Source: Schmidtea nova
Lineage: Eukaryota
Direction: 5' to 3'
DNA length: 63,856 nucleotides
Assembly: GCA_044892505.1 (NCBI GenBank)
Contig: CM097882.1
Span: forward strand, 167,586,001 to 167,649,856
Shown: in pieces, positions 6,526 to 44,400 of the stretch
Numbering within the stretch: position 1 is the stretch's first letter
How the letters are laid out: each line of letters begins with the position of its first letter
Notes under the pieces: generated by a model
What the model was told of the DNA's origin: nothing
The model's database searches: none
Seen by the model: the letters and a program-made list of their open reading frames with translations, nothing else
Program-made: the position numbers and the translations under genes

Positions 6526-9500
6526 GTTTGTGCATCAATTATTTATTATTATTGTTAGCTAATTTTAGATATTTAGATTTTGATTTAGAGAAAACAGTTT
6601 ATTTATTTACAGCTGGAAGATATGAATTTCAAAATAAAGGCGCTGATATGTTCATAGAATCTTTAGCCAGACTTAACTATCGTCTTAAGGTATATTTTAT
6701 TTTTAACATGATAGTTGCTCATAATATTTCTCTATTAAATTTTGCTTTAATGTGTATATTATAACCTCACATTTTCACTACATCCAATATTTTCCCTGTA
6801 TAATTTAACCTTTGTAATCTTCTGAGAAAAGCTATACCAAACCACCATCTATTTGGCGTGTCTGAAAAGTAATGAGACTACCCTTACCCCACTTACAAGA
6901 CAGAAAGTTTGCAGTAATGCAATTTATTTTCATACAACATAGTCCCCCTTGACTCGAATGACATCTTTACAATGGGTATACAATCGTTCCAGCTCATGCT
7001 GGAAGCGTTCCCACTCAATGCGTCTGAACAACTGCAACGACTCCTTCTGAACTTCTTCTTTGGAGTGGAAGTCCCTCTTTCTGAGGTCTTTTTTCAGGTG
7101 GTTGAACAACCAGCGATCACATTGATTCAAGTTTAGATTGTAAGCTTACTGATGGATTAGCTTGACCTGCCTTTGTTCAAAGAATTCACTGGTGTGTACA
7201 GATGCATGAGGACGCGCATTGTCATGTTACCACCAGAGCTGGTTAAGCCGTGTTGGAGAAGAACGCAGAGTCCTCCATTTTTCACCAGTATCATGGACAA
7301 ACTTAGTGTATCGTTAAGAGGTCACTGTTTCTCCAGGTGGGACAGCAATGTTCTCATCTGCTGTTGATGTTGAAGGCCTTCCACTCTTCGGTTGGTCACA
7401 CAGAGATGTTCGTGAACCTTCAGTGAAATCCTTACACCAGCGAAACACTGTGGCACGGGATAGTATATCAGTCATCTGTGTTTCTTGTAGCTGCTCATAG
7501 ACTTCTGTCCACGTTGTTGTTCAATAAACGCATATGCACGAAAGTGCTCTTTGCTCAGCTCCATTTGTGCAGTCGTTGCACTAAAACAAAGTATGCTACG
7601 AATCATGCCTTATATAGGGTCACACACGCATGTGTGTGAGTAGCCACCTGATTGGTCAGATAGTATAAAGTCTTGTGATTCGTTTAACGCAGTACCAATG
7701 CATAGCTAGCAGTTTTGTGTGTGTGGCATACGAAATCTCATTACTTTTCAGACACGCCAAATATAAGGAGCCTTTATATATTCATAATACCCAACAAACA
7801 CATAAAGTTTAACCAAATTTGACAACTGATTTCAACATAAACTTCAATTAAATAAATTTACACTTTCAGATAAGTCTGTCAAAGGAGAATTATTTTTTAC
7901 AATCAAAAGATGCTTCGGTAAGATTTTAAAATCGTACTTATTAGAAGTACTCTGTTAACAATAACTGCATTTGTTACTCTGTTTTGACAATAATCATTAC
8001 AATTCTGCTAGCAAAATCAACAATCTTTCTCGATTTCAATGATATTAGGACTTATATAAATAACCATAAGCAAATTTTATTAAACTAAAACTGTTTTATA
8101 GCAATTAAAAGTTAAAGGTATGCCTAGCTGTTATAATCCAGATTATTATGTCCTATATTCAGAACTGATTCATAGAGTTTTACGTCTTCGCGGGTCATGA
8201 CTTTGATACCCCCGTATTAAAAGTTAACAATCCAGATAAATAGTTTGATTGATTTGATTTGCAAAAATACAAAATAATTAATTAATTAAAATTTTCTTAA
8301 CGACATTAATTTTTTAATTTTCATTTACGTGCACCACAATTATAATTTTTTTTTGTTTTACAAATTAAAAAATTAAATTAACTATTTAATCTGGATTGTT
8401 AACTTTTAATACAGGAGTGTCAAAGTCCTGACCCGCAAAGACGTCAACAATCTATGAATCAGTTCTGAATAAAGGACAAAATTATTGGCTTTAACTTTAT
8501 TTACATTTTATTATCATATTAATACTTAATTATTGATAAAAATATGAAATAATGCAACTAAAATATGTTTAGTTATTGTTAAGCACAACATTGCGATAAA
8601 TTAAAAAAATTTTCGGTCGTGGCTTGTTAGAAAATTTTACCAATAGTTTGCCAAAAAAAATTTGACATCCCTGGTTCAATAAATAAAACATTGATTGTAA
8701 TTAATATTTATAATATTATAAATAATTTTCAGATTGCAAATAGTGATGTTACAGTTGTGGCTTTCCTAATATTTCCTACTCAAACAAACAATTTTAATAT
8801 TGAAACATTTCGAGCACAAGCGATAGTTAAACAAATAAGAGATACTGTTGAAGAAATTCAGCATAATATTGGACTGAGACTGGTAGATAGTTGCCTCAAG
8901 GGTTCAATTCCAACTGCAGGCTCGGTTTTCGACAATGATGATGTAATGAAGCTTAAACGATGCGTTTTCGCAGCACAAAGATTCTCTCTCCCCCCTATTT
9001 GTACACATAATGTTACACAAGATCATGTTGATCCTATACTCTGTAATTTAAGGCGGTGTAATTTATTTAACAACAGAACTGATAGAGTCAAAGTAAAATT
9101 TTATATTTTCCATTTTTAATAATTTTTTCCGTTTGTTTTGTTTATATTTAAAAATTTGAATATTTTATATATTAAAACAGGATTTAAACAATTTTACTAA
9201 ATTCACTCAAACTTACAAAAATAATGAGTATTTCTGATACTATAATAAATAATTTGTTTAAAAATATATTTTTATTGGTGCCTTAAATTCCTGAAATGAA
9301 ACAAAAAAGTCCTTTATAAATAACTACAATGCGGCACCTCGACAAAACAGCCCCTGACAATAACTAAGTCAGTTTTGTCCAACTGAAAATCTCATATGGC
9401 ACACTAAATAAACTCAAATACCCGCGGTACTTTCGAAAAAAACTGAAAATCAAAATATTCTTCATGGTATTTTCGTTTTGAGGTTACTTTTTCTCTTGCT

Positions 9501-12500: not shown

Positions 12501-15500
12501 CAAATAAAACTTCATTATAGAATATGGTGTATTCTGGTTATACGATAACTGACGGTTATTGTTATTAATAAAAATTAAAAATCAATGCCTCTTGAATTTT
12601 TTTAACTTAAATAGGCGAACGAAAAAAATCAGAGAGGGCTCATTGAGTCTCGGTTGTTCTAGAACAACCAAGTGCCGTTTAGGGTTAAGAGTACTTTTGT
12701 AAAAACATTGATTTAACGTTATTTTACAAAGAAAACAAGTGTTTTAAACGAAGACGATAAAGCATCAAGAAAAATGTCTTAGGAAAATGTTACCTTACCT
12801 TTAGCCTCAAGTATGGACGGAGAAAAGTTAAAACCACTAATGGTAATAAAATTCGAAAAACCACAATATTTTAAATTCAAAAAGTATTCTTACATGGTTA
12901 ATAAAAACTCATAGATGACCCGTGAAAATTTTAGTCCATGGTTTTTTTTCCGGGTCATCCTATAGTATAGCCTGTTTAATTTTTCACTTTCGGGAGATAA
13001 ATTTCAAAGATAGGAAACTTATACGTAAGATAGATTTTTACGTTCAACAGTATGGATAATTCTGATTTTGGTAAAAGGAATATTTGAATATTATTTTTAT
13101 TATTTATAATAAGTTTTCAATTCATCGACATTTTTTTTAAACATCTTTCATCTGAATTTTACTTTCCTGGAACTTTTCAATATCTGTCTCCGATGTATTG
13201 TCAATTATTTAATTATCAAAAGTATCACGATTGTCCGTTTAGGGCTCTATAATTATATTTTATTTTCCTTCTCATTACCATTAGAAGCAGAAAGGATGAT
13301 TTCATTTTCATAAGCATTATCATTTATTATCTTTACCCATTTGTTCCGAAACTTATTGTTCAATATAAAAACCATTTTTGTATAGTTTTTATAAAAAATG
13401 AAAATTTTTGAAAAAGAAAGAGTTCAAAAATGTGAACAAAATATGACGTAAATGATATTTTTTGTGAATTTAATACGTGATTTTGTTAAAAAGTGAACTT
13501 TTTTCCACGTGTTAGTTTATAAAATTTCAAATAAATAAATGAAATTTCAATAAAATTTTATTTAATTTGGTTAAAACAATTCACAAATATTTTGTCAAAA
13601 TAGTGTAAAATGATAGAGGTTGGCATTTAAAGGGTAGACAAACTTATTAATTTATCGCACAAAAAATGATTTTGAACTTACAGTTTTGTAATGCTGGTGT
13701 TGGTTACAGTTTTTTTAAAAATCTTATAAATGTTTCATGATCAATAGGGGTTCATTAAACTTTAAATATTTATAAGAAATTTTATAATTATTGATAATCT
13801 GTATTGTGAGAAACATCGATGATTAAATTGTAATCTTCTAACTAATTTAATAAGTTTATTAAATTAATTTATTAATTATAGAAATTAAATCATTATTGGT
13901 TTCCGTAAATATTAGGTTATCCGTAATGAAATGTCCGCTAAGTGGATTATAATTCAAAAGACGTACAAATATATTTAAACATTTATTATTTAATCAAAAT
14001 ATGATCCATCAACATTAATACACTTTTGCCATCGATGCGGGAGCTTTTTTATTCCTTCTTTTAAAAAGTTTCATGTCTGAATTCCAAGAAAGTGATAACT
14101 GTCGATTTTATCTCCTCCAGATCTTTGACATTCCTTCCCTTGATATAAAGACTTAAATGTCTAAATATGTGGAAATCAGCTGATGATAGATCGGGTGAGT
14201 AAGGTGGATGCGGTAAAACATCAAATTCTAAGTCGTGTAATTTTTACAGTGACTTTCGAAGCGTGAGGCCTGGCGTTATCGTGCAGGATAATTGGATCTT
14301 TTTATTAACAATTGCAAGGTGATTAATAGTGAGTTTTTCATGCATTTGTTCTAGTTCTACGCAGTATCGTTCAGAATTGATTGTTGTGCCCATTTTTAGG
14401 AAACAATAACCATACTCAGACCTCCAGACTGAGAGCATGACTTTCTTTTGGTGAAACTCCGGTTTTAGAAACTAATTTGGGCATTGATGTTTATCCAACC
14501 ATTCTCCTGACCGTTTACGATTATCATATTGAATCCATTTTTCATCGCAGGTAATAACATTATTAACCCTTTGATTAGTAAGTTTTATTTTACAATTCAA
14601 TCTCTACAGAGTGATTTTTTTTAATTATTATCAATGAAATCTTATCAATTTCATGTAAAAGTTGTGAAATATGTCTATCATTTTCAAAATATCAACAAAA
14701 AACTCAGAACTAACTAAAAAAACTAAAATTTATTTTAATAACATTTCAAAGTATGATAATCGGAAAAACAAGGATGAACGCATAAACCAACGCCACACTC
14801 TTGGCACATACATCTTGTGCTGGATCTTTTCTTCGCTCTTCTAGTGATGTGTTTACAAACATGGCATTGTCTTTGTGTCCTCGATCCCTTTTTTTGTCTG
14901 TGGGACTGGCACGTGAAAATGTCTTTCCTTCAACCAAAGTGGTTTGTCACCACTGGAAGGTCTTCCGACTCTGAGTTTTTCTTTCCGTTGCATGCTTTTC
15001 AAATATTTGCCTCGCCAGCTCTAGTCTAAACTTTGATAGATGAGGCTTCGTTCCTGTTTTCATTTGGAATAATATTTATGCATTATAAACTGCTAAATCC
15101 ATCAAATGCATAAAAAAAATTTGTATCATTTTACAGATTTTCTGGCCATCAACGAAAAACTTATGACCATATCTGCTTTGTTAACAGCTCCCATTTTCAA
15201 GTTGTAATCAACTATACAGATTGGTTTTACAATAGATTCACCGGTACTGAAATGCTTTTTTCCCGTGTCTTTTGATTCATTTTTGTGGACAGTTGTTAGC
15301 ATGTGTATATCCCTTTTATCATGCCATTTTATCACCATCATGTTCAATGTGTTTCTCATTTCAGTTTCACCCTTCTTCATTTTATTAGGGAAATTTTTAG
15401 GCATACCCTTCCTATTGCATTTTACTGTTCCGCAAGATCCTGTTTTTCTCATAAGTATGTAACTACTTAGATGAGTACTTGAGTACCAATTATCATAGTA

Positions 15501-18500
15501 AATTGTATGGCCCTTGTCTAAATATGACTCAAGTAATGTTGTTACTACAGAGCCAGAAATACCTAACCCTGTAATATTATTATTTATTTCAGTAGAAGAA
15601 CCAGTATAAATAATGAAATCAAGAATGAAACTAGTCACCACGTCACACAAAAGAAAAATTTTTATTCCAAATCTGTGTCTCTTAGAGGATATGTATTGTT
15701 CGATGTCGTGCTTGAAGAGATTAGCAAGTTTGCAATCTGTTTAATTTCTGCAATTCAGTCAATTTATATGGGACCCAATTTTGAAGCTTTTAGGCCATAC
15801 CAATTGTCTTTAAATATTCATGAACGATTCTTTTTGAAATAGAAAGATCTATAGCAAATCCTCGAACAGATTTTGTTGAATTTTGAGCAACAGCTTCACG
15901 TAAATCTTCCTCCGGCAGCGAGGCATATTTTCGAGATCAATTTCAATCATCAAATTTTTTAAACTAACGCCTAATAGTTATTTCATTAATTGTATCGAAT
16001 CCAAAAGCATTATTACTATTCCTCTTCACCTCAAATAAATTGATTTTCGATTTTTACTCATATAAATGAAGAAGTCTTAAATCATGATTTTCTAACTTGT
16101 ACATTTCTATTTGAAAATGAAATTTACAGTAATGAAATTATTATTAGCTTACTTAATATTTGAATTTGAAAAAAGAGCTTTCTAATGAACTTTAAAATAA
16201 AGAAATATGTTTTATATAAAAAAGTTATGACGATTTAAAATTATTATATATTATTCGGACATTTCATTCCGAACACTTAACAATACTTGAAACTAATTTA
16301 CATGGCAAGCTGACGATAAAAACAATTACTTCGAAGTATAGTTTAATTACTAAAAATTTGCCAACATATTTTACTTAGATTAGAATTTTTATTTGTTTGT
16401 TTTATGAACGAGTTTTCGTCATAATATTTAATTAACACATCAAATAAATAATTATTCACGCTGGTCTAGTAGTATCTGAAATAGTTAAGTTATAAACTTG
16501 CGTAAAAATTTGATATTAATACTTNNNNNNNNNNNNNNNNNNNNNNNNNNNNNNNNNNNNNNNNNNNNNNNNNNNNNNNNNNNNNNNNNNNNNNNNNNNN
16601 NNNNNNNNNNNNNNNNNNNNNNNNNNNNNNNNNNNNNNNNNNNNNNNNNNNNNNNNNNAAATAGAATTATCATTAGAAAATTGAAATCCCTGCAATATTA
16701 ATCTCCTGATACGCTCTGTTTATAACAAATGTTTATTATTACATTTATTAAATAAATATATCTCAATACTTTTCACTGATATAAAAATGTTTGTTTTTTA
16801 ATTAATTGCAGATTTAAAATTTTATGAATGAATTTTTAATGTGGTTTATTTTCAATTTGAGATACACAGACTACTAAATTCGGAAATCTTCGCGGAGTTG
16901 AGTTGAACTGAAACGTTCAAATAATTATTTGTATTTACCGTTGTGATTTGTAACTATAACCAATTCAGTTATTTAGAATCCATAAATGGTAACAGGTGTT
17001 GCAAAATTATTCATACACAAAAGAGCATAAGTTACGCGCGAGATAGCTAACAATTAATGTTATCTATTAGAATATATTAAATTATAAATAGTAAAAATGC
17101 ATATCTACTGAAAATCATGTCAACAAGCCGGGCTTCACCCGGAAAGCCGGTTTTAATGTTCCTGGTCCGGTTTTCATAAAAGTTTTGAAAAATTTAAAGC
17201 AGTAAATAAAAAATAATTATTTATTTTCATATTTGAGGGGCTAATATGTTAGTTAATGCGTGGTATGCATAGTGCAATACATGCATAGTATTTAAAACCT
17301 TTACATTTTTAATTTTATTTGCATTTATTTATATACATTTGATGTTATATCTTGTTTTCTTTGTTAATATCACATATATATATATATATATAGATAGATA
17401 GATAGTTACTTTGTGCAATTGGAAAAAGTGATTTCTAATAATAAAAACTTATTTTCATCTTCCAAGAATTGTGTTTTTTACCCAAATATCCGGGTCAACA
17501 ATTTTTCAAAGATGGTATCACTGCCTATGTTGGAAAAGGACAAAGATCAAGTGTAGTCATAAATTACGTGCATATACTATAGAAGAACAGAAAAATAAAT
17601 TATCTCACAAAGCACACATAAACAACACACAAAAATCATATAATAAAAAATACACACAAACAAATTAAATGCAAATTTTAACATTTAAAAAATGATTTTT
17701 GGAAATTTTTCAGAGAATTTGAATATTATTAACGATTTTGCGAGTTGAAGAATCTCATTGAAAGAAATAATTATCATTTAAAAAAAATTTTCACGAAAAT
17801 TAACATTTTTAAAATTAACAAAAACACTTGAAAAATCATCACATTTTTAAAAAAATCATAATTATATATTTAATTTAAAAATTAAAATACCATTATAATA
17901 TTAAAATATTGTAAATATAATCAAAACTTACTAAATTACTCCCAACTGCCCTTAATATGTGTCTCGTTTGCACGTAATAAACGGTAGCTGGTGTAGATTA
18001 GTGCCAACGGGTGTTTCAATGCAATTTTTCTCAGATTTTTGGAAAAAAATAATGAAATAATATCTTAAGTTCTATATTTTGAGTTATAATAAATTTATAT
18101 TTTCAAAGAATTTTGCAAAATTCTTTGCTAAAAGTTATTACGTTTTGCAAAGATGAGGATGTAATAGGGCATGAATTATTTTTATTTATAATTATTTTCT
18201 ATGTTCTTAGCCATTCAGATATTCATTGTACATCTATCGATTACACAACAATCGATACCTAAAATAATGTTCGAAAATCGAAAGTTGAAATAATATATAT
18301 TAAACAAGTTATTAGAGTGTGATTAGGAATTCATATATTTACAAAGCAGGACAATAAATGCTACTGACTACTTTCCTTTGGGAAGTTCACTTGAAATACC
18401 AAAATATTCGATCAAAAATATGATTTTAAAAATATAGTCGTCTATCAAAACAGTAGAAATGGTGTAAGCAAGCCTCGAAGATTAGTGTTTTACAAATAAA

Positions 18501-20593
18501 TTTTAGTTAAAAATGGTTTTAACTTACTTTGATTGTAAATAAATTCAAACTTTTTTTTAAAAAAATCATAATTTCCTAAAAAGTGATTAAAAATAAAATT
18601 GTTGAGCATAGATAATCTTTTAAAGCTTTTATAGGGATCCTATATCATTATGAGATTTAAATAAAAGCCTAAAAAGTTATCTTACTAAATCAAATTACCT
18701 GAAAGTTATTTTAAAATGGATAAAATTTTAAAATAAAATTTTAAAAACTAATTACCAATGACCTTGGATGTGTCACACTCACGTGTATTATAGCTGATGC
18801 TACTGAGTGAAACATTGTATCTAGAATTTATCTATTTGATCAAAAATACTTTGTGACACATATATTAAGTTGGAAGAAAAGTTCTGTTGTATTTTCAATN
18901 NNNNNNNNNNNNNNNNNNNNNNNNNNNNNNNNNNNNNNNNNNNNNNNNNNNNNNNNNNNNNNNNNNNNNNNNNNNNNNNNNNNNNNNNNNNNNNNNNNNN
19001 NNNNNNNNNNNNNNNNNNNNNNNNNNNNNNNNNCATTATTTTAATCCCGCTTCTATAAAAATTCTTGTTCATGGACTGAAAATACTCAGCCACTGCCTTA
19101 GAATTAAACTTTTTTTTCCATTAGATAATTTGGCAGGGACCTGAACAGGTAATAATTAGGTGGTGCAATGTCAGGTGAATATGGTGAATGACTAAGAACT
19201 TCCCATCCCAACGCAGTAAGTTTTTGTTATATCACCATTGCAGTATGTAGTCAAGCATTATCGTGGTGAAAAAAGATTTTTCTAGATGCCAACGCAGGCC
19301 TTTTTTCCTTGATAGCTGCATATAATTTATACATTTTAATAGATACATTTAAGTTTAAAGAATTTAGTTAAATAAACATTAGAAGATAATATAAAAGCAA
19401 TGTAGTATTTTTAATATTGTACTCGATAATTTTTCTCTGTTTTATAAATATAATTTGTATTTCTTTCAATACTTTCTATATCAGAAATTTTTTATTATAA
19501 AGAATAGACCAATATTTTTTTAAAGGTACAGGAAATGTATTCGATTATTTATACTTTGTATTTTTCCTAGTTTGGCATAATCAAAAAATATCGTCACGCT
19601 ACCTGAATCAAGAGTTCAAAAGAATATTTACAATTTTAAAATATTACAAACATTTTATATGATTTTTAATAGGTAATTTTTCATCCGGAGTTTATAACAT
19701 CTACGAACCCATTAATTGGAATGGACTACGAAGAATTTGCCAGAGGGTGTCATTTAGGAGTTTTTCCTTCTTATTATGAACCTTGGGGATATACTCCAGG
19801 TATTTCTCTAAACTTTAATATTCTTAATATTAAAAAATGTTTGATTTTGTAAAACATAAATAGTAATTATTTTTATTAACAGTTTGTATTGTTATGTATA
19901 TTATATTAGCTCGAACTTGTGAGATATCACGTGGTTTACTGACACAATTTAAAATATATCTCATTGATTAGGAATTATATCTTAATTATTTTAAAAAAAT
20001 ACCCAACTACCCACAAAAAAATAAAAAATTAAACTTTATTTAAATTAAATGGTAATGATTGTTTGGTACAAACTGAATCCCATTAATTTGGAAGCGAGCG
20101 GGACACAGCATGTAAAAACCGCGCAAGAAGTATGCTCAAATATCTGAGCAAACATCAAGTAAAAACAAGGCATTAGAAAACAGGAAAATATTAATTAAAA
20201 AAAAGTTAAATTTAATATGAACAAAAGTAAGAAGTAAAGACGAAAAAACACAGACAAAAAAAATTAACAAAATACTCAGAAAAGAATTAGTTATATATTA
20301 AAATTCAGCAAATTTTTTAATTGATTATCTTTATTGATAGTATAAATGTAAAAAATGTAAAAGTAAATAGTAAAAATTAAAGTAGTTTAAATTTACGTAA
20401 AAATAAAATTTATTAAAGTAATGAATAAAATTCTAAATATTAATATAAATTTATTTCAGTAAAATAAAATATTTAACTTTTAAATAAAATAAATTAAGTA
20501 AAAAGAACATTTTAGAAGCATTTGTTTTACTGAATCAATTAAATTAAATGCTCTGAAAATAGTCTAAGTAAAAATTCCATTTCAGTGTTTTTA

Positions 20594-20626
<33 letters not shown>

Positions 20627-23600
20627 TATTATTATTATTATTATTATTATCAATAATTCTCATAATGATGACTATAGATCAAAAAATTTTTTTTAAACAA
20701 TACCACAATATTTCAGCACAGCTTTTATACACACTTAATAAAGGCTGTGCCGAAATATTGTGGTATTGTTTAAAAAAAATTTTTTGTTCTAGTCATCATT
20801 ATGAGAATTATTGATAATAACAATAAAAAAGATCAAAAGTGAAAAAAAGATAATTATGATAATAATAATAATAATCTACTATAACTCTGTATGGTTTATT
20901 TATTAATGAATATTTACTAAAAATTGTTAATTACAATATTGTGTAACTAAAATATATTGCTTACATAATAAGAAAATATTGTGATCTAGTCTTACAAAAG
21001 TTAAAATCATTGAATTAAAAAAAATTGAAGATAAAAATAAAATATGATGACAAAATACATTGTATTTAAAAATTATAAGTTAAAAATGATATTTTTGTAA
21101 ATTGTAATAAATTACCGTTAAAACTCACTTTCCTGCAATTTAACAAATTAAAAATTGTTTAAGATCAAATATACAATATTCACAATATTGACATTGATTT
21201 ATAAATATTTATTTATCAATATGGCGTTACATCCATGCTTTGTTACATAGAAAATTATAATAATAGATTATAATACTGATAAATCCATTATAACGATTTA
21301 TTTAATTTCAAGTTATAAATTTTTATTGAAAATTATTTTATTTTAAAGTTTCAGAGAATTTAAAACTATTTAACTATTTTAGAGATTTGTTAAATAAGGC
21401 ATGTGTCAATTTTTGTTTATTTTAAGGTTTACATATAGAAAACAAAGAAATTTATTTAGAAATTATTTGACATCACCTTAGAAAAAATATCACAAACATG
21501 TAAGTTAACATCCCACTTATGCTATGGATACATTTAAAAAGTAAAAGGTAACGAAATGTAGTTATACATGGATTGGAACATTTAACTAAAATCTAAATTT
21601 CAAAATAACCATAATTGGTTTAGCGCCTTATTTCTTAGAAACAAATCCAAAGAATTCAGTGATGTGGGACATCAAAAGCTTTCTTTTGCTAATCAAAGAA
21701 CAATATTTTCACTCCTATGATCACCTATTTATCATAATGTGTTTTGGGAGAGGTAAAATTGTTTTCATAACCTTTGTGATGGTCATAATTGGTCATAAAT
21801 GGTCATAATTCCTAAAAATAAAGTATATAAAAACAACAAAAGCCAAATTTAATTTTAAATAAAAAATCCCAAACAATGACATGACCTTATTGATTGTGAC
21901 ATATAAACCACAAACTAAGGATAACTATTATATATTTTGTATAAAATAAGTTTCAAGGCAAATAATGTTTATCACGAACCTTTCGCTATTATAGTGTAAA
22001 ATTATTCTACTATTATTACAATACTAAAGTGACGAAGATTTCGCATGATTCCAAATTTTAAAAAAGTGATATTAATAGAAATAACCAACTGCGATTGCGG
22101 TTTAAACTTTAAATATTTACGTGCATTATTTTAGTACTTGATCTTGTACAATATTTCGGATTTCCCATTGTTATTGACGGCAATGTGTAATCTTGAGTCT
22201 TTCGCTCCGTCCCTGTGTAAAACATTCGTCCGTCAAGTCTAAATAAGGAACTTAGATGGGCTGCCTTTGTAATTCATTAATAGTGTTTGCGAATGCAAAC
22301 CGAATGGGGAATTGTAAACGTTTAAATGAAAAAGGCAAGTCATTTAGGATTAATGGAATTCTTGTTATAAAAACTTGATGTTAGATCAGTGACAATTTTT
22401 AAGAATTTTATAAATAAAATATATATTATTCTTTAATTTTAATTATTTATATAATAAATTCTCGTACATACACATATATATATATATATATGTGGTGCGC
22501 CCAATTAGTCGTGAGTCTAAAATAGAAAGACTTAAGATATCAACACAAAACTTTGTATTTAGAACAAGCATGGTAAATAGGCATCATTTCTCAAAATAAT
22601 TTCCTTCTGCACTGACACAATTTTCCCAGCGAATAACGAGGTTTTCGAAGGCGTTTTTGAAGAATTATGGAGACTTTTCTCCCATAAAACTCTCCACGGC
22701 TGCTCTTAAATCATGTTTGTTGGCAAACACCTGGCCCCGCAGATGCTTCTTAAGATGGTTAAACAGGAAAAAATCGGAGGGAGCCAAATCAGGGCTGTAT
22801 GGTGGATGGGGAAGCAAATTGAGCTCACAACGCTCAATTTTGGCCATGGAAACGCTGCTGGTGTGGATGGGAGCAGTATCGTGTAAAAAATAGAGATCAC
22901 ACACTCTGCTCTTGCGTCGTGCCTTCCTTCCTTGCTGCACGATGTTGGAGTAGTAAGAACTATTAATCTTCACGCCGGATTCAGTAAAGTCAGTCAGAAT
23001 AATGCCATTGGCGTCTCAAAACACCGTCAGCATGAGAGCCTTTCGGTGGCAAGTTGAGGACCGAATTTTCAGTAAGTTGCTTTCTCCTAGCAGTTTCCAT
23101 TCTTGAGACTCTCTTTTAGATTCAAGAACATAAAGGGACAACGGTGTCTCGTCCACAGTGATGATATTATCAATGAAACGGTCTCCAACATTGGTCTTGA
23201 TCTGCAGATTCTCCAAGCAGCATTCCAAGCATCGTTGTCGCATTTCCACCGTTAAGAAGCGTGGCACAAAACGGGAACATAGTTTTTGAATACCACTTTC
23301 AGTGAGGAGAGTATGCACAGTGCCTTTGCTCACATTTAGACGGGTTGTGAGATCTCTTGTCGTTATTTTTCTCTCGTTTTGCACGATTGTCTGCAGCTTT
23401 TGCGTTATTTTTTCATCAATTTCTAAGGGTTTTCCAGATCTTTCTTCGTCCACCACGGAGGTTCTACCACTCTGAAAGTAATTGAACTAACAATAAATTG
23501 TTGCTGTAGATGGGCACTCCTTTTGGTAAACAGCTTTCAGTTCAGAAAGAACCTCTTCTCTATTTTTTCCTTTCAGAAAGAGAAAGCGAATAACGCTACG

Positions 23601-26600
23601 GTATTGAATAGTTTCCAGAGGCATATTTCGAATGTTCGCAAAAATATACTTAAACAATAATTAATTATTTAAACAAAATACATTTTCTTTACCTATATAT
23701 GTTGAAGTTTAAATATGCCTGTATCAATTTTTTTACTATTATTATTTCTATATTAGTCTCACGACTTATTGGGTACACCACGTATATATATATAATGTAA
23801 AATAAGCAAATTTTGATGATTTCTTTACTATTTTTATTATTATACAAAACTTAAAATCAAAAAATATTTGTTTTGTATATTAAGCGGAGTGCACAGTTAT
23901 GGGTATTCCATCAGTTACTACCAATCTTTCTGGATTTGGATGCTTTATGGAAGAACATCTCGAAGACCCAAAATCTTATGGAATTTATGTCATCGATAGA
24001 CGTTTTAAGAGTGGGGAAGAGTCGATACTTCAGCTTACTGATGTAAGCATAGATTTTTTATAAGGTTGCAAATAATTATTTATAAATAATGAAATTTTAA
24101 GTTTTCAAAAATGTTAATTTTGGTATATAAAATTATAAAGTAGTTTATCTGAACTTTTCTTAAATAAAAATAAAATAAAAAACATCACTAAAATAATTCA
24201 TCCTTCGTAATTAATAAACTATTTGCAATTTCTTTTTTCTTTCTTTTTTATATAACAAAAGAGCAATATATTCAATTCAAACTGTTAGCTTGCACAATTA
24301 AATATTTAATACAGATACAACTACAGTCGAACCCGCTTAAGACGAACCTCTTGGGGAAGGGGGAAAAATTCGAATTAACCGAACTTCGTCTTAACCAAAT
24401 AATAGAGAAACGGTCACAAAAACCATTCAATTCATGCCTCTCGCAAATGCTATCATTGCTAAACATAATAATACAATTTAAAGGGTCTATTAATTAAGCT
24501 TTGACAAGTATAGTACAAACAGTTCATTCACAAACAAAATTGAAGTACAAAATACATATCAGTCATGCTTAAAATAATCAGTAATAGATGTTTGTGTAAA
24601 ATTTGCTGTACGAGGAAGACATTAAAACAATAAATGAAATTTCTGATGATTTCATAAATGATTTTGGGAGAGAAAGCTCACATGTTTGTCGTTCGGAATC
24701 GTTACTATTTTCAGTAATATCAGTAGAGTTGGAGTATTTTTGAAGGAGGCAATTAAATGATGATATTGCAGTTGACTTAGAGTCTATCGGTGATAGATTA
24801 TCCAGACAACAACTACAGGACTGATTAGCCGACGTAGTCGGCTCTATAGGTTTGGTTTGCCGAGATTGTGTAATGATTTGCGGACGTTGACTAATTAGAT
24901 ATCGACAAATTGATAAGGCAAGCTTAACAGCTTCATTGTGTAATCCATTACTGCGTAACGCTAGGACTCTGAGACATGATAATGGCAATTGCTCTGGCCA
25001 AATACGTTTGACATCATCTTTGTCACTGAGAATTTCCTGTAAATGCGGAAAATCCCAGTTCTTATTATCTGCGATCAAAGCTAATCCGTTACAAAGTAAT
25101 GATAGTGATGACCTCATTTGAACTCCATTAGACCAAGGAGGATTTAAACAATCACGAATGTAGTCATATTCAGGCCGGTAGACATACCAACAGCCTTTAT
25201 ACATTTTGGGAACACAATCTTCTGGGTGTATATAATTATCGAAACAAGTTACCCATAAAACTAGTCTAACAAATTGGCTAGGATGTTCTGGTCTAGCTAC
25301 CATCCAGTATGGTGAAACGAATGCTACTGAGTTGAAAAGAAATGCAGCAAAAGCTAGACATAGAGCTAATTTCAAATTGACAATCTTTTTTTATCTCTTT
25401 GTCAATTCTTCGCAAATCAATTTATATATTTAAAAAATTGAAATATTCAAAAAAAATGTATTTCGACTCAAAAAATACAATTTTTAAATCCTCGAGAAAA
25501 TAATAATGCCATATTAAAACACCAAATACTTATTTTTTTTAAAGTAATTCATAACACAAAATTATATCATTCAAAAATATTAAATCTCGTAATACCATAA
25601 ACAGAGAATTTAGTCCATAAGATATACAAAATTTTTAGAAAAAAATCTATGATTAAATTACATAATTTTTTTAAACTTGAATTTTCTTAGATAATTGAGC
25701 AAATATATCATGATAAGTTCGATTTTCAATATACATGATTTCAAGACCATTCTGTAGCTTCAATTATTAGTGCCTTGATTGTTTTTTGGAGTTAACTCGT
25801 CATTAAAATGAACTGTTGAAAATCTAATAGCACTGAATAAAGTGAAAGTTTGAGGCAGACCATGTTCCTTTAATATTTTGAGAAAAGCTTCAATATCGAC
25901 CTTTTAGACCACTACAACCTAGTGGACAGGTTGTTTGAGATGTTGATTTTATGTTCGGAGAATAGGGATGTTGAGAAAGAATTAATAGTATGTAAGATAA
26001 AGAAACACTAACTCTTCTGAAAAAAGTGGAGAAACAGAGAAATCAGATAAACTTTGTAAAAAGTAACATTAGAGCGGCTCATGAGGAGATGCATAGATTG
26101 GAACAGAACAAACAGAAAAAAACAATGAGAAGAAAGCAGATGAAGAGAAGGACCAGAATGCTGGTTATGTCACAAAATTGACCGTACAAAATGGTCTGTC
26201 GGCTAAAATGAAAGCTAGAGTATTAGACGTGGCACAGAAGCGGACATATAAGCAAGAAATGCCCAGATAAAAAAGCGCCAGATTCTTTGGTTGTGTGAAA
26301 AAAAAGTCATATAAGAAGATTATGTTAGGAAATACGGTGTAAAAGATGCAACAGAAATGGTCATATATTCGAAGAATGGAAGAAGATGACAGGGAATAGT
26401 GTTTACAGACAAGTGAAGGTAGTTTTAGTAAGTCGTACCCAAACAACAGGAAATATATCGAAGTTAGTGAAAAGGACAAGAACTATATTTGTAATATTCA
26501 AGCAAAATTCGGCAGATAAGTAAAGGATGGAGAACGATTCATGTGAGCCTTGGAAAATCTAAAGATTAACAAAGATAACAAATTAAAAGAAATAAAAATG

Positions 26601-29600: not shown

Positions 29601-30136
29601 CATATAATTTATTGTATCTTTAGTATCTATTTGAATTCTGTCATTATTCAAGAAGGCAACGTATTATATTGAGAAACAGAACAGAGAGGTTGAGTGAATT
29701 ATTAGACTGGAATAATTTATCATTCGTAAGTAAATTTTGTACTTTCAAAAAATAATTTTGTTAGTATTATAAAAAGGCAAGGTTACTGTCCATGGCAAGA
29801 CATCTTCCGCATTTATTTCAAGATAAGAATCTTGCCGTGGCAGTTACTGAAAAATCTAAATTAATATCAGATACTGATATTTTTTCAGAAGGCAGTTTTC
29901 ACTTGGATCGACCATATTCTGCTCCAAATTCGCCATCTGTTTCCGAAGTTACAGAACACGATTTTCAAGACCCACCAAATGAAGAGCAAATGAATTTTGA
30001 AGTGGACATAGTTGATGACAACAAAGAACGTGTTGAATTAGGATTAGCTCCAAGTCCCGAAAATCTTTTAGACACTAATGAACTTAGTTATTTGAAACAA
30101 TACACGCATACAAAAATGTCCCCATTGAATAAATAG
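6278..30136 (+). CDS. GYS1: Glycogen synthase, 3' part (7 exons; 5' exons lie upstream of the window)
   Basis: Exons 6278-6525, 6569-6689, 8733-9092, 19673-19799, 23885-24042, 29624-29725, 29765-30136 join in frame at GT-AG junctions. Motifs: [46 protein letters not shown] (catalytic E-x7-E), [18 protein letters not shown] (G6P arginine cluster), RPYSAPNSP. Confidence 0.97.
6569..6689 (+). CDS. GYS1: Glycogen synthase exon ([10 protein letters not shown]...RLNYRLK)
   Basis: Follows a 43-bp intron; AGRYEF motif. Confidence 0.95.
6852..7761 (-). mobile_element. Internally deleted mariner element
   Basis: Perfect 26-bp TIRs tttggcgtgtctgaaaagtaatgaga with flanking TA. C-terminal transposase remnant [18 protein letters not shown]...VIRVKGDYV. 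Confidence 0.9.
8149..8478. repeat. Foldback/MITE-like inverted repeat
   Basis: About 90-bp imperfect arms tgtcctatattcagaactgattcatag...aatccagat / atctggatt...gaataaaggaca. Confidence 0.8.
8733..9092 (+). CDS. GYS1: Glycogen synthase exon ([11 protein letters not shown]...DRVK)
   Basis: tttcag acceptor, gtaaaa donor, 120 codons. Confidence 0.95.
10200..12684 (-). mobile_element. piggyBac element (PGBD2/3-like) with decayed transposase
   Basis: 13-bp TIR ccctaaacggcac/gtgccgtttaggg and TTAA TSD on both sides. GRGSMD...[12 protein letters not shown]...YNKH...[11 protein letters not shown] in ORF 10705-11151, with frameshifts upstream. Confidence 0.9.
12740..12940 (+). mobile_element. pogo/Tigger DDE remnant
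   Basis: [13 protein letters not shown]...[13 protein letters not shown] resembles the DDE_1 GEKLKPLVIG...WMT motif. Confidence 0.6.
13912..16280 (-). mobile_element. Decayed mariner split by a piggyBac insertion
   Basis: Imperfect TIRs ttaggttatccgtaatgaaatgtccg / cggacatttcattccgaacacttaa. [16 protein letters not shown] and MLSVW...TINSERYC at 13990-14640; N-terminal remnants near 15850-16100. Confidence 0.75.
14740..15820 (-). mobile_element. piggyBac (PGBD4-like) transposase remnant; termini not resolved
   Basis: [46 protein letters not shown] and a cysteine-rich C-terminus. Confidence 0.85.
18821..19330 (-). mobile_element. mariner C-terminal remnant, partly in a gap
   Basis: [37 protein letters not shown]. 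Confidence 0.8.
19673..19799 (+). CDS. GYS1: Glycogen synthase exon (VIFHPEF...YYEPWGYTP)
   Basis: Catalytic motif; AG/GT boundaries, phase consistent. Confidence 0.95.
20594..20650. repeat. (AAT)n(ATT)n palindromic microsatellite
   Basis: Directly visible; abuts the foldback element. Confidence 0.9.
20644..20820. repeat. Short foldback palindrome, same family as 48780-49264
   Basis: About 85-bp near-perfect arms with a loop of about 9 nt. Confidence 0.92.
22023..22380 (-). mobile_element. Helitron PIF1 helicase C-terminal remnant and probable 3' end
   Basis: [33 protein letters not shown]...[11 protein letters not shown]...[10 protein letters not shown] matches the Helitron RepHel C-terminus; degenerate hairpin plus ttagt near 22023-22046. 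Confidence 0.85.
22491..23782 (-). mobile_element. Full-length mariner (1292 bp); transposase 22584-23624 with three in-frame stops
   Basis: 29-bp imperfect TIRs, TA flanks; [11 protein letters not shown] and [16 protein letters not shown] motifs, all in one frame. Confidence 0.95.
23885..24042 (+). CDS. GYS1: Glycogen synthase exon ([10 protein letters not shown]...QLTD)
   Basis: gtaagc donor; conserved [13 protein letters not shown]. Confidence 0.95.
24324..24640 (-). mobile_element. 3' end of a pogo/Tigger element
   Basis: TA|cagtcgaacccgcttaagacgaa TIR; the +1 frame at the end of the chimeric ORF reads [12 protein letters not shown], a Tigger-like C-terminal motif. Confidence 0.75.
24578..25375 (-). 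pseudogene. Intronless chimeric ORF: claudin-like (Kune-kune/PMP22 family) N-terminal half fused to a ZSWIM4/5/6-like internal fragment
   Basis: aa 1-100: TM1, AFVSPYW, RL(G)LWVTCF, YKGCW, RD(W)LNPPW..VQ and TM2. aa 104-160: [11 protein letters not shown]...[28 protein letters not shown] resembles ZSWIM6 HWQDSHLQHII...[29 protein letters not shown] (recalled). Confidence 0.75.
25920..27530 (+). mobile_element. Highly decayed Gypsy gag-pol remnant
   Basis: Zn-knuckle remnants [10 protein letters not shown] and CKRCNRNGH; RT remnants APGTFQK and [11 protein letters not shown]; many frameshifts. Confidence 0.8.
29624..29725 (+). CDS. GYS1: Glycogen synthase exon ([13 protein letters not shown]...LSF)
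   Basis: Arginine cluster; gtaagt donor. Confidence 0.95.
29765..30136 (+). CDS. GYS1: Glycogen synthase last coding exon
   Basis: Follows a 39-bp intron; YYKKAR...RPYSAPNSP...TAG stop. Confidence 0.93.
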   Translation, partial: YYKKARLLSMARHLPHLFQDKNLAVAVTEKSKLISDTDIFSEGSFHLDRPYSAPNSPSVSEVTEHDFQDPPNEEQMNFEVDIVDDNKERVELGLAPSPENLLDTNELSYLKQYTHTKMSPLNK

Positions 30137-41400: not shown

Positions 41401-44400
41401 CATCATTGCAGCTGATTGAATGTACAATTGATTAATATCGGCAATACATCGACAAGTCATGTCACAGGACAGTTCGCATTTAAATCGTGCAGCTTCCATT
41501 TGTGCACGGCATACTTGCGATCCGCAATCAGGAATCATTCCGGTCCTAACGCAACCGGTACTTTCAGTTATGTTAAATAATATTGTAGCTGAGATCTTTT
41601 CATTCATATTATCTGGGACTTTTCTTTGTGTAGCAACTACACCACAATCATTATCTCGAACACCAACAGAAATTAATCCATCTAACGCAATCGCTTTAAA
41701 TGCATAGTCGTCCTGAAATAATCTGCCTTCGGGTGAAAAAATTGTCATATTACGATCAAAGGCACTTGAATTCAAGAACATAACGGAAGTCCAAATTCCA
41801 ATGTTTATTTCCTAAATAAATCCCAAACGAAACAAAATCAAAATCCAAATCGCATTAATTAATTCCAATAGTTCGAAATCAAAAAGTACACATTAATTCA
41901 TAAATTCACTGACACAGTAAGCAAAAATTCAAATAGTCCCAATTACCAAACTTTATTCCATTTACAATGCCATTAGCTTCCAAATTAATTCAACGAAAAG
42001 CTAAATAACTCCACTCAGAAAAAAATTTAAAATCCGCCCTAAATAAATCAATTAATTAATTCAGTTAAACAACTCAATCAGAAAAAAATGTTTTTAATTA
42101 AGTTCCAAAATTCCACCCATTTATCCAATTTTTCACACCCAATAATTCCCTTTTTAAATTAACATACCCAAAATAATTACAATTAAACTCAATAAACAAA
42201 ATCCAAATCCATCTCAAAATAAATCAATTAAATCCGTCAAACAAATCGTTAACTATCTTTCGTTCCATAATTTATCTAAAAATCTCATTCTTTCTGGGAG
42301 TTCTCTATTCCATGAATCATAATCATACAATCCGAGTTAAATTATTGATTGGCGATATTTTGACGCTGTCGTAATTAAAGGTACGAGTGCACATAACAAG
42401 CGGCTGCTTCGTGGATATAATAAAGCATACTCTAAGTCTTCAAAGGGGATGTGAGACAATTTCAGATGCTCTTCCAGCATCAGATACAATCCCAAACCTT
42501 GGAATGCTGCACTGATGAATTGTACTAATTGGATAAGCTCGGTGCAATTATTCAGTGTTTGATAATCAATTTCTGAGACGTTTCCTAGAAACCATTCATC
42601 GAATGTTCGGATAAATTGCTGATGTCGGCTTTTGTCTTGCCATTTTCGAAATTTTATAACTAAAAAATCGATCGGATCCTGCTGGAATTCAGTGTTGTCG
42701 GAAAACATTGAGGAAATAGTTCCGAATTTCTCCATTTCATCTAACATTGCTTTGATTGATGTTACCAATCGGATGTCGGTACTAAATGCTCGGTCTGTAC
42801 ACCGACGCTGCAGCATTCCGCTTTCCGCTATTTCCTGATATTTAGTTGCCAATTTGCCCATTTTTGAATCACAGCCAAAATATCGATGACAATTAAATAG
42901 CATAAGACGAAAATCACACATAAACTCCTTGATATCGAGATAATCTGCACTTTCCATTTTATCCTGCATTTCATTGAGACATATTGGTTCTTTGACAATG
43001 CTTGTATAATCATTTAGATGGAGCTTTTTTGGATCAATTGGGTTTAAAAATGGACGAGTAATAATTGAATAACTACTAGACATGATGCTTGTTAGGATAT
43101 TGCGAGCACAATTCGTTTCAATCGACGAATTCATCATAAATTAATTAGAGTTAGTGATAAGACCTTCTAACGGCTTCCAGGCTCGTCCTACAATCTCTCA
43201 CAGCGATCAAGCACCCAATTAATTATTTTAATTATTATTTTAATTATTTAAATTTTTATTACTCTTTTTATTATAAATATTAATATTCTTATCATTATTC
43301 TTATTATTTTATTTATTTCAGGCTGAATCACAAACTAGATGTCAAACAATGTTGACCTTGCAACATGTTGTGATTGGACTAGGTTCAGCTGGCATTGGTT
43401 GTCATAAAGAAATCTTAAAGGTTACCAGATCTTGTCTTCTTGATCGATCAATGATTGTTAGAAGTGTGGCTTGCAAAGTAAGATATTTTTTGTATTTATT
43501 ATTTAATTGTTTTTGATATTATATGCAGTTATATTAATTTAATTTAAACATTATATTTAAAACCCTTTTTATTTTTAGTTTACAAAATATTTGGGATATT
43601 AAATATAGTAATTTTTCGAGCTAAACTAACATGCGTCATGATTTGAGTTGGAAAATCCCGACTTCGGCTTGTAAAAATAACGATTGAAAATAAATTATGT
43701 TTCACTATTGATTCGGAAATCTGATAGTATACACATGTAATTGTGTAGATATATAATATCACTATTTATGGTGTATGATTCATTTCCGCAGTATTAGAAG
43801 ATCTAGGATAGGATATAGAATTTAGCATAAAACTTGTTTGTCTTCTAAGGTTTTCAATGGAAACATTGGCTTTATTGGCCATCTTTTTAAGATCGAAATA
43901 AACATTGACGAGAAAGGCTAAACATTTTCAACTTTATTATTATATAGTAATAACGCAAAAANNNNNNNNNNNNNNNNNNNNNNNNNNNNNNNNNNNNNNN
44001 NNNNNNNNNNNNNNNNNNNNNNNNNNNNNNNNNNNNNNNNNNNNNNNNNNNNNNNNNNNNNNNNNNNNNNNNNNNNNNNNNNNNNNNNNNNNNNNNNNNN
44101 NNNNNNNNNNNNNNNNNNNNNNNNNNNNNNNNNNNNNNNNNNNNNNNNNNNNNNNNNNNNNNNNNNNNNNNNNNNNNNNNNNNNNNNNNNNNNNNNNNNN
44201 NNNNNNNNNNNNNNNNNNNNNNNNNNNNNNNNNNNNNNNNNNNNNNNNNNNNNNNNNNNNNNNNNNNNNNNNNNNNNNNNNNNNNNNNNNNNNNNNNNNN
44301 NNNNNNNNNNNNNNNNNNNNNNNNNNNNNNNNNNNNNNNNNNNTAAATTGAAATTCTAATTGTAAATTACAATTTAAAGTTTAAAATATCACTTATTTTA

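What the first reader, a model, noticed from the sequence alone, without database searches (positions are those of the whole stretch)
24578..25375. In-frame chimera of a claudin-like gene and a ZSWIM4/5/6-like gene, antisense in a glycogen synthase intron
Seen: one 265-codon intronless ORF. Its first ~100 aa carry claudin-like TM1, ECL1 (LW..C...GCW) and TM2. At about 25070 it switches to a ZSWIM-like segment ([19 protein letters not shown]). Established: these are unrelated families, one a septate/tight-junction tetraspan protein and the other a Cul2-type substrate receptor. Inference: gene-fragment shuffling by retroposition or transposon capture produced a potential two-TM membrane fusion. 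The start is TTG and an upstream A-run may be frameshifted, so it may be a pseudogene.
Basis: partly seen in the sequence, partly recalled or inferred. Interest (0 to 1): 0.7.

Follow-up and report, generated by a model that had tools for sequence, protein, structure and literature searches.

The report
Retrotransposon LTR carrying claudin–ZSWIM cargo
The "chimeric gene" is a broken, stand-alone terminal repeat (solo LTR) of a planarian Ty3/gypsy jumping gene that picked up spliced pieces of a host claudin-like mRNA and a host ZSWIM mRNA and read them in frame as a head on its own Gag protein; this copy is dead, but the capture habit of the element family is unusual.

Summary
The 265-codon ORF at 24578-25375(-) is real and is a claudin-like::ZSWIM chimera. 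It is not a gene made at this locus. Window 24612-25916(-) is a 3'-truncated solo LTR of a Ty3/gypsy-like retrotransposon, antisense in a glycogen synthase intron.

The same roughly 1,550-bp unit flanks a gag-pol element as a 98% identical LTR pair with a 5-bp target duplication. It also occurs as many solo LTRs with 5-bp duplications (over 100 protein-level matches; 616 first-look DNA candidates).

Inside the LTR lie intron-less pieces of two host genes. They are joined at 8-12-nt microhomologies, which fits reverse-transcriptase template switching:
- a claudin-like gene (5'UTR, exon 1, start of exon 2, C-terminal tail);
- a ZSWIM4-8 gene (a 49-nt exon plus 608 nt of the next exon).

In better copies the ORF starts at the claudin ATG and runs through the LTR end and primer-binding site into the element's ORF1. 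Sister elements carry NOMO or PCMT fragments at the same place, also in frame.

The window copy has lost its ATG (now ATT), has a frameshift and lacks its last 255 bp, and its lineage evolves neutrally. The scan has already flagged other claudin::ZSWIM copies and the cargo-Ubl-Gag design elsewhere in this genome (Schmidtea nova).

The parts
24612..25916 (-). 3'-truncated solo LTR (1,305 of about 1,550 bp) of a Ty3/gypsy-like retrotransposon. It starts TGTAGTGG at 25916, and the last 255 bp of the LTR are missing.
   Evidence: Co-linear at 84-95% identity with 40 scored copies, all starting at the same base. The same unit forms the 98% identical LTR pair of an 8.6-kb gag-pol element with TSD CTGCC. 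Solo copies have 5-bp TSDs.
25436..25916 (-). Non-host 5' part of the LTR (AT-rich, presumably U3 plus promoter). Its first 120 bp or so are shared with sister LTR families.
   Evidence: No match to the host parent genes. The first 120 bp match sister elements at 80%. Word depth over 25722-25923 is very high in public runs.
25138..25435 (-). Derived from the claudin-like host gene: about 30 nt of 5'UTR plus exon 1 (TM1 and the first extracellular loop). The ancestral start codon is now ATT at 25404-25406, followed by a 1-nt frameshift in the A-run.
   Evidence: 90.9% identical to L033 4645-4349. Start-codon loss and 10-nt versus 9-nt indel.
25074..25137 (-). Derived from the start of claudin-like exon 2 (start of TM2), joined to exon 1 without the parent's 46-bp intron.
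   Evidence: Matches L033 4302-4239 directly after the exon 1 match.
25037..25085 (-). Derived from a complete 49-nt exon of the ZSWIM4-8 host gene. It overlaps the claudin part by about 12 nt of microhomology (ATTAGC..TGAT).
   Evidence: Matches L025 6245-6293, which is flanked there by AG| and |GT.
24612..25036 (-). Derived from the first 425 nt of the large ZSWIM exon, joined to the 49-nt exon without the roughly 9.8-kb intron. Full LTRs carry 608 nt of this exon, then a 70-nt claudin C-tail and the roughly 10-nt LTR end.
   Evidence: 94.4% identical to L017 6116-6544. Splice-junction alignment.
24578..25375 (-). The reported 265-codon open frame. It is the remnant of the LTR-borne cargo ORF, and its last 11 codons run out of the LTR into unrelated sequence.
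24322..24611 (.). Fragment of a different dispersed repeat that abuts the truncated LTR end. It marks the rearrangement that removed the LTR's 3' end.
   Evidence: At least 40 copies at 93-97%, all ending at the same base. Public contigs of other copies run on differently past 24612.
23881..24063 (+). Glycogen synthase exon (Pfam profile positions 486-546), upstream boundary of the host intron.
29621..29953 (+). Next glycogen synthase exon (profile positions 539-622), downstream boundary of the host intron.

Best explanation
Window 24612-25916(-) is a decayed, 3'-truncated solo LTR of a Ty3/gypsy-like LTR retrotransposon of the planarian Schmidtea nova. It sits antisense in a glycogen synthase intron.

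In this element family the LTR holds host cargo between about 480 bp of its own 5' sequence and its last 10 nt or so. The cargo was copied from spliced mRNAs:
- first, the 5' end of a claudin-like mRNA (5'UTR, start codon, exon 1, start of exon 2) and a piece of its C-terminal tail;
- later, a 49-nt exon plus 608 nt of the next exon of a ZSWIM4-8 gene, placed in the middle.

The joins lie at 8-12-nt microhomologies and the introns are missing. I infer that reverse transcriptase switched templates between element RNA and host mRNAs. The first capture was probably made while the minus-strand strong-stop DNA was synthesised, which would explain why the cargo reaches the host mRNA's 5' end and why it is present in both LTRs.

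In intact copies the cargo ORF begins at the claudin ATG and runs through the LTR end and the primer-binding site into the element's ORF1. ORF1 consists of a linker, a ubiquitin-like domain ending in GG, and Gag. The cargo is therefore translated as the head of a cargo-Ubl-Gag polyprotein. I infer that host deubiquitinases cut Gag free behind the Ubl.

The window copy itself does nothing. Its start codon is gone, its frame is shifted, its end is deleted, no internal element follows it, and its lineage evolves neutrally.
For: Repeat status: both halves occur side by side in the same order in most of the matches found (149 and 98 matches). The DNA search gave 616 first-look candidates, and the 40 scored ones were 84-95% identical.

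LTR status:
- A 98% identical direct-repeat pair of 1,479 and 1,347 bp flanks 5.8 kb carrying RVT_1, RT_RNaseH_2, Integrase_H2C2 and rve domains.
- That element has the TSD CTGCC and a PBS-like TGGTGTCAG 2 nt after the 5' LTR.
- Five of seven solo copies have perfect 5-bp TSDs and two have 4 of 5.

Host parents:
- Claudin-like gene L033 has three exons and a 46-bp intron.
- The ZSWIM gene's 942-codon exon carries PF21055 at E=3.6e-42.
- The introns are absent in the LTR, and the junction microhomologies were read directly.
- Older LTR variants (L036, L037) have the claudin parts but no ZSWIM insert. They carry two different in-frame internal deletions.

In-frame design:
- L019 (389 aa) and L018 (504 aa) read from the LTR into ORF1.
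- Sister elements with an 89-94% identical interior have 721-957-bp LTRs. Their 917-921-aa ORF1 starts in the LTR with NOMO1-like (E=5e-17) or PCMT (E=6e-23) fragments.
- Ubiquitin-family hits cover profile positions 1-69 of 72 in three elements, just upstream of the DUF7041 Gag-like domain.

Selection:
- Intact copies give dN/dS of about 0.3-0.7 (24 synonymous to 35 nonsynonymous changes; binomial p=0.001). The window lineage gives about 1.0-1.1.
- All indels in open copies are multiples of three (48, 54, 258 and 9 nt).

Window copy decay.
Against: - No RNA data: the only public runs that hold the stretch look like Tn5 DNA libraries. The transcription start, the U3/R/U5 limits and translation of the cargo are all inferred.
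- The LTR ends in ..CCAAA, not the canonical CA. The PBS was not matched to a tRNA.
- The ubiquitin hits are below Pfam's gathering score.
- None of the roughly 100 scored copies of this subfamily has an open frame longer than 506 aa. No intact cargo-to-Gag ORF1 was seen for the claudin::ZSWIM family itself.
- The dN/dS test rests on few substitutions and on copies chosen because they are open.
- The strong-stop capture model is one of several possible routes.
Confidence: 0.85

Rival explanations
1. A unique chimeric retrogene or pseudogene formed at this locus by retroposition or transposon capture of two host mRNAs. It might encode a two-TM fusion protein.
For: The ORF is intron-less and chimeric, and both parts derive from spliced host mRNAs.
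Against: - At least 100 copies share the same junctions.
- The unit has fixed LTR termini and 5-bp TSDs and flanks a gag-pol interior.
- There is no poly(A) tail.
- The window copy lacks its start codon and is frameshifted.
Confidence: 0.02
2. The cargo is a neutral passenger. Host fragments were picked up by accident, and the ORF is open and in frame with ORF1 only because the copies are young. It has no role for the element.
For: - Most copies carry stops or frameshifts.
- Pooled dN/dS is about 0.7.
- Earlier notes of the scan report cargo as varied as OGT and nuclear-receptor fragments, which argues against a specific cargo function.
Against: - Three independent cargoes (claudin, NOMO, PCMT) are all in their native frame and in phase with ORF1; chance is about 1/27.
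- The ZSWIM insert and at least five later indels all keep the frame.
- Intact copies show an excess of synonymous change (p=0.001).
- If translation starts at the cargo ATG, staying in frame is needed to make Gag at all.
Confidence: 0.3
3. Some open solo-LTR copies (226-346 aa) have been co-opted as a host multigene family encoding short claudin-TM1::ZSWIM-linker proteins.
For: Several solo LTRs keep complete open frames with an ATG (L015, L006, L029-L032). These show dN/dS of about 0.3-0.7.
Against: - Purifying selection in the active master lineage before insertion explains the same pattern.
- The protein lacks every defining domain of both parents.
- There is no expression evidence.
- The window copy is broken.
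Confidence: 0.05

Closest known systems
Bs1 LTR retroelement of maize (multiple cellular gene transductions forming a hybrid ORF; Jin & Bennetzen 1994 and Elrouby & Bureau 2001, 2010, as summarised in PMC13317346)
   Same: An LTR retroelement carries intron-less fragments of several unrelated host genes, stitched into one hybrid open reading frame and copied with the element.
   Different: - Here the cargo lies inside the LTR itself, so it is present twice per element and in every solo LTR.
- It starts at the host mRNA's 5' end and start codon.
- It is read in frame into the element's own Ubl-Gag ORF.
- Sister subfamilies carry different cargo at the same site.
- The host is an animal (a planarian), not a plant.
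BARE-2 and Veju-type LTR variants made by aberrant template switching (PMC13317346)
   Same: Foreign sequence was introduced into an LTR by a template switch between co-packaged RNAs, founding a new LTR subfamily.
   Different: Those inserts are other retroelement or unknown sequences and act as promoters. Here the inserts are host coding exons kept as an ORF.
Retroviral transduction of cellular genes and N-terminally extended Gag (murine leukaemia virus glyco-Gag) - from my own knowledge, not tested here
   Same: - Spliced host mRNA pieces are captured by copy-choice recombination.
- Fusion proteins of the host-Gag kind arise.
- An upstream, leader-encoded extension can add a membrane-targeting head to Gag.
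   Different: - Retroviral captures replace internal genes, not LTR sequence.
- Glyco-Gag's extension is viral, not host-derived.
- No ubiquitin-like cleavage module is involved.
LINE-mediated processed pseudogenes and chimeric retrogenes
   Same: Intron-less copies of host mRNAs, with chimeras formed by template switching.
   Different: This unit has no poly(A) tail and no variable-length TSD. It has fixed LTR termini, a 5-bp TSD and a gag-pol partner.

Membership tests
LTR of a Ty3/gypsy-type LTR retrotransposon (solo LTR) | The same sequence occurs as a direct-repeat pair flanking a gag-pol interior. | tested here: met
   G000:C1:408187028-408195664 has repeats of 1,479 and 1,347 bp at 97-99% identity around RVT_1, RT_RNaseH_2, Integrase_H2C2 and rve ORFs.
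LTR of a Ty3/gypsy-type LTR retrotransposon (solo LTR) | Short target-site duplication of fixed length at the ends of insertions. | tested here: met
   - The full element has the 5-bp TSD CTGCC.
- Five of seven solo copies have perfect 5-bp TSDs and two have 4 of 5.
- The window copy could not be tested because its 3' end is deleted.
LTR of a Ty3/gypsy-type LTR retrotransposon (solo LTR) | Canonical TG...CA termini, with PBS and polypurine tract next to the LTRs. | tested here: inconclusive
   - The LTR starts TGTAGTGG but ends ..CACCAAA.
- TGGTGTCAG lies 2 nt after the 5' LTR and was not matched to a tRNA.
- Only a weak purine run (GGGGCTGA) precedes the 3' LTR.
LTR of a Ty3/gypsy-type LTR retrotransposon (solo LTR) | Domain order RT - RNase H - integrase. 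| tested here: met
   On L018, reading along the element's sense strand, the order is a DTGS-motif ORF, RVT_1, RT_RNaseH_2, then Integrase_H2C2 plus rve.
Claudin / PMP22 superfamily (Pfam Claudin_2) | Four transmembrane helices with the W..C..C first-loop motif, scoring above the family threshold. | tested here: not met
   - Only TM1, loop 1 and the start of TM2 are present.
- Claudin_2 scores 16-20 bits against a cut-off of 29.1.
- The fragment derives from a true family member, L033. The eight homologues I scanned pass Claudin_2.
ZSWIM4-8 family | SWIM zinc finger and the ZSWIM4-8 C-terminal domain (PF21055). | tested here: not met
   - The ORF's second half has no Pfam hit and no ZSWIM hit in the all-protein search.
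- It is a copy of a poorly conserved stretch of the parent's large exon, upstream of the parent's PF21055 domain.
LINE-type processed pseudogene or retrogene | Poly(A) tail, variable 7-20-bp TSD, single or few copies. | tested here: not met
   There is no poly(A) at the 3' end of full copies, the ends are fixed, the TSD is 5 bp, and there are at least 100 copies.
Cargo-Ubl-Gag retrotransposons of this genome (design noted earlier by the scan) | Host-derived cargo read in frame through a ubiquitin-like domain ending in GG into Gag. | tested here: inconclusive
   - In-frame read-through from the LTR cargo into ORF1 is shown in L018, L019 and sister elements B and C.
- Ubiquitin hits (E=6.5e-4, 0.02, 0.036) cover profile positions 1-69 of 72 and the domain ends LYGG, but all are below the Pfam cut-off.
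- Cleavage was not tested.

The most novel reading that the evidence does not exclude
The LTR-borne host cargo is a selected, exchangeable module. This planarian gypsy lineage repeatedly replaces the R/U5 part of its LTR with the 5' end of a host mRNA, by template switching during strong-stop synthesis. It thereby borrows a host 5'UTR, start codon and N-terminal head; here that head is a claudin signal-anchor, and in sisters it is a hydrophobic NOMO or PCMT N-terminus. The head is expressed as cargo-Ubl and cut away from Gag. The cargo would influence where or how well the polyprotein is made, for example by targeting it to the ER membrane, or would interfere with host proteins.
Probability: 0.3. 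Interest if true: 0.75.

Novelty: new variant of a known kind. Interest (0 to 1): 0.5.

Why it matters
For genome annotation, dozens to hundreds of "claudin::ZSWIM chimeric genes" in the Schmidtea nova assembly are LTR copies, not host genes, and should be masked. The scan has flagged several of them separately.

For transposon biology, host coding sequence built into an LTR, kept in frame with Gag and swapped between sister subfamilies is an uncommon form of gene transduction. My literature searches found no description of it.

Each capture keeps its splice junctions and microhomologies. The family is therefore a natural record of reverse-transcriptase template switching, and a possible source of exon shuffling in planarians. 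LTR/Gypsy expansion accounts for much of this species' larger genome (PMC11410931).

Tried and rejected
- PDB sequence searches with the ORF and with the ZSWIM parent exon were blank.
- The word-based protein search with the ZSWIM parent exon found only one partial relative, which starts downstream of the captured stretch. Conservation of the captured ZSWIM stretch outside this genome could therefore not be shown.
- Spliced-leader test: the planarian SL seen at window 43135-43174 is not present at the cargo's 5' junction. Capture of a trans-spliced mRNA is not supported.
- RNA evidence: the look-up of sequencing runs gave four runs of one study with no RNA on record. Laid on the window they look like Tn5 DNA libraries, with Nextera adapter ends. 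They show only repeat-level depth, and one contig spans the LTR's 5' junction with just 29 nt on the LTR side. There is no support for or against expression.
- The idea that the roughly 71 nt at the LTR end are original LTR sequence was rejected. About 60 of them are the claudin gene's C-terminal tail.
- The idea that all cargoes share a secretory head is only partly tenable, because earlier scan notes list OGT and nuclear-receptor cargo.
The spliced parent coding sequences were not joined; their exons were searched separately by reference.
Full report
**1. Observation**

The ORF listing gives one 265-codon frame at 24578-25375(-) starting at TTG.
- Residues 4-67 hit Claudin_2 and Clc-like only weakly (E about 1e-3, below threshold). 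Residues 103-265 hit nothing in Pfam or in the PDB.
- The surrounding + strand carries glycogen synthase exons at window 6245-9104, 19649-19801, 23881-24063 and 29621-29953.
- A mariner-type transposon with 50-nt inverted ends sits next door at 22479-23794.

**2. It is a repeat**

Six-frame searches of the window's own genome gave 149 matches for the claudin half and 98 for the second half. Typical identity was 75-92%. In most matches the two halves lay side by side in the same order, and many carried stops.
- A DNA search with 24612-25916 gave 616 first-look candidates. The 40 scored ones were 84-95% identical and began at the same base.
- blastn against fetched copies puts the window copy's limits at 25916 (a sharp end common to all copies) and 24612.

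**3. It is an LTR**

At G000:C1:408187028-408195664 the unit occurs twice in direct orientation (1,479 and 1,347 bp; 97-99% identical).
- The two copies flank 5.8 kb that encodes a zinc-knuckle Gag region, a DTGS protease motif, RVT_1, RT_RNaseH_2, Integrase_H2C2 and rve.
- The element is bounded by the 5-bp duplication CTGCC. It starts TGTAGTGG, ends CACCAAA, and has TGGTGTCAG 2 nt behind the 5' LTR.
- Seven solo copies of about 1,550 bp were checked. Five have perfect 5-bp target duplications and two have 4 of 5.
- The window copy is co-linear with LTR positions 1-1294 and lacks the last 255 bp. At 24611 it abuts a truncated copy of another repeat, which has at least 40 copies at 93-97% (loose ends).

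**4. What the LTR is made of**

Coordinates are those of the intact copy L019, with the LTR start as position 1.
- 1-480: AT-rich sequence with no host match.
- 481-768: matches the claudin-like gene on L033 (G000:C1:370748000+, minus strand) from about 30 nt upstream of its ATG to the end of exon 1.
- 769-832: matches the start of exon 2 of that gene. The gene's 46-bp intron is absent.
- 832-880: a complete 49-nt exon of a ZSWIM gene (L025 6245-6293, flanked there by AG and GT).
- 881-1478: the first 608 nt of that gene's next exon (L017 from 6120). About 9.8 kb of intron is absent.
- 1471-1540: the claudin gene's C-terminal tail (L033 3803-3734).
- The last 10 nt or so are the LTR end shared with sister families.

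The claudin-to-ZSWIM join lies in a roughly 12-nt near-identity (ATTAGC..TGAT). The ZSWIM-to-claudin-tail join lies in an exact 8-nt identity (ATCCATCT).

The ZSWIM parent exon is a 942-codon frame with PF21055 ZSWIM4-8_C at E=3.6e-42.

The claudin parent has three exons:
- Exon 1 gives Claudin_2 E=2.6e-6.
- Exon 3 gives Claudin_2 E=0.0026.
- I searched the exons apart and did not join them.

Relatives found by the all-protein HMMER search match only residues 10-108, and the eight I scanned are bona fide Claudin_2 proteins. No protein with the combined architecture was found.

Older LTR variants (L034, L036, L037; 78-80% identical in the LTR, but about 95% identical to the claudin parent once the intron gap is discounted) lack the ZSWIM insert. 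L036 and L037 carry two different in-frame internal deletions of the claudin sequence. The order of events was therefore claudin capture first and ZSWIM insertion later.

Window coordinates of the parts:

| Part | Window coordinates |
|---|---|
| Non-host 5' LTR | 25436-25916 |
| Claudin exon 1 part | 25138-25435 |
| Claudin exon 2 part | 25074-25137 |
| ZSWIM 49-nt exon | 25037-25085 |
| ZSWIM large-exon part | 24612-25036 |

**5. How the cargo is read**

In L019 an ATG-initiated 389-codon frame starts at LTR position 510, crosses the LTR end and the PBS (..LPKMVSEE..) and continues into the interior. In L018 a 504-codon frame does the same.

I examined three sister elements whose interiors are 89-94% identical from the PBS onward.
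- Their LTRs are short (816, 721 and 957 bp; pairs 99.6-100% identical). They share only the first 120 bp or so and the last 10 nt or so with this LTR.
- In two of them a single 917-921-codon ORF1 starts inside the 5' LTR and runs through the same ..PKMVSE.. junction into Gag, followed by a 1,136-codon pol.
- The LTR-encoded heads are host fragments: NOMO1-like first domain (E=5.2e-17) and the N-terminal half of PCMT (E=6e-23).

ORF1 contains a ubiquitin-family match covering profile positions 1-69 of 72.
- The match has E=6.5e-4, 0.02 and 0.036 in the three elements, all below the Pfam cut-off.
- The domain ends ..LYGG and lies about 55 residues before the Gag-like DUF7041.
- This agrees with earlier scan notes on a cargo-Ubl-Gag design in this genome. 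I treat those notes as a lead that I only partly tested.

**6. Selection and decay**

- Three independent cargoes are in their native frame and in phase with ORF1; the chance of this is about 1/27.
- The ZSWIM insert keeps the frame on both sides.
- All indels in open copies are multiples of three (48, 54 and 258 nt in one subfamily, and 9 nt).
- Pairwise Nei-Gojobori dN/dS is about 0.3-0.7 among open copies. Pooled over independent pairs there are 24 synonymous and 35 nonsynonymous changes against a 22% synonymous-site share (binomial p=0.001).
- The window copy against its nearest relatives gives 1.0-1.1.
- The window copy has ATT for the ancestral ATG (25404-25406), a 10-nt instead of 9-nt indel in the A-run (a frameshift), and the 3' deletion. 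The "TTG start" is an internal Leu codon of the ancestral ORF.
- No scored copy of this subfamily has an open frame above 506 codons. The subfamily therefore looks extinct, while sister subfamilies look young. I only describe them.

**7. Mechanism (inference)**

Three observations bear on the mechanism: the introns are missing, the joins show microhomology, and the cargo begins near the host mRNA's 5' end and sits directly upstream of the last 10 nt or so of the LTR.

These fit copy-choice by reverse transcriptase. After priming at the PBS and copying the end of U5, the enzyme would switch into a co-packaged host mRNA and run to its 5' end. A transfer to the 3' end of the element RNA would then place the cargo in both LTRs. 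Later switches would have inserted the ZSWIM piece. Splicing of a read-in host transcript into the LTR end is an alternative that I could not exclude.

**8. Context**

- The genome statistics (283 contigs; 1,251,382,582 bp; N50 455,729,997) are identical to those of Schmidtea nova schNov1 in Table 1 of PMC11410931. That paper attributes the enlarged genome largely to DNA and LTR/Gypsy elements.
- The closest described cases are maize Bs1 and the BARE-2/Veju LTR variants (PMC13317346). Searches for a planarian or Ubl-Gag precedent found nothing pertinent.
- The scan has already flagged other copies of this same chimera. s1-411097 falls at my copy L006, and s1-428773 falls next to the copy at C1:3331020xx.

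**9. Limits**

- There is no RNA evidence. The four public runs are Tn5-type DNA contigs.
- The U3/R/U5 limits, translation of the cargo and Ubl cleavage are untested.
- N stretches were left as they are.

Noticed in passing
window 22479-23794: A mariner/Tc1-type DNA transposon with 50-nt terminal inverted repeats (88% complementary). It has decayed transposase ORFs on the minus strand (DDE_3 and HTH_Tnp_Tc3_2 hits) and lies in the glycogen synthase intron just upstream of the exon at 23881.
   Followed up: partly
window 24322-24611: A 290-bp fragment of another dispersed repeat (at least 40 copies at 93-97%), truncated exactly where the LTR is truncated. The type of element was not determined.
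   Followed up: partly
window 15126-15650 (-): A 174-codon ORF that looks like a piggyBac-type transposase fragment. This is judged by eye only.
   Followed up: no
L038/L039 (G000:C1:278361106-278368649), L040/L041 (C2:111646916-111654277), L042/L043 (C1:107259987-107267815): Sister gypsy elements with 99.6-100% identical LTR pairs. Their LTRs encode NOMO-like or PCMT-like host fragments, read in frame into a 917-921-codon ORF1 (frame broken in the first element), followed by a 1,136-codon pol. The integrase search gave 24,649 first-look candidates genome-wide.
   Followed up: partly
L026 5110-5590 (G000:C1:330655110-330655590, +): A paralogous claudin-like gene, 47% identical to the cargo, with an intron at the same position (after ..WLNP). 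This supports the exon structure inferred for the parent.
   Followed up: partly
G000:C1:278133585-278133850: Matches to the TM3-TM4 exon of the claudin parent (67-89%, with frameshifts). This may be an LTR variant that retains more of the claudin coding sequence. It could not be fetched.
   Followed up: no
L018/L023: 5' LTR versus 3' LTR of the full element: The two LTRs of one element differ by large internal deletions: about 89 bp in the 5' LTR and about 219 bp in the 3' LTR. Both lie inside the cargo, although the LTRs are otherwise 98% identical.
   Followed up: partly
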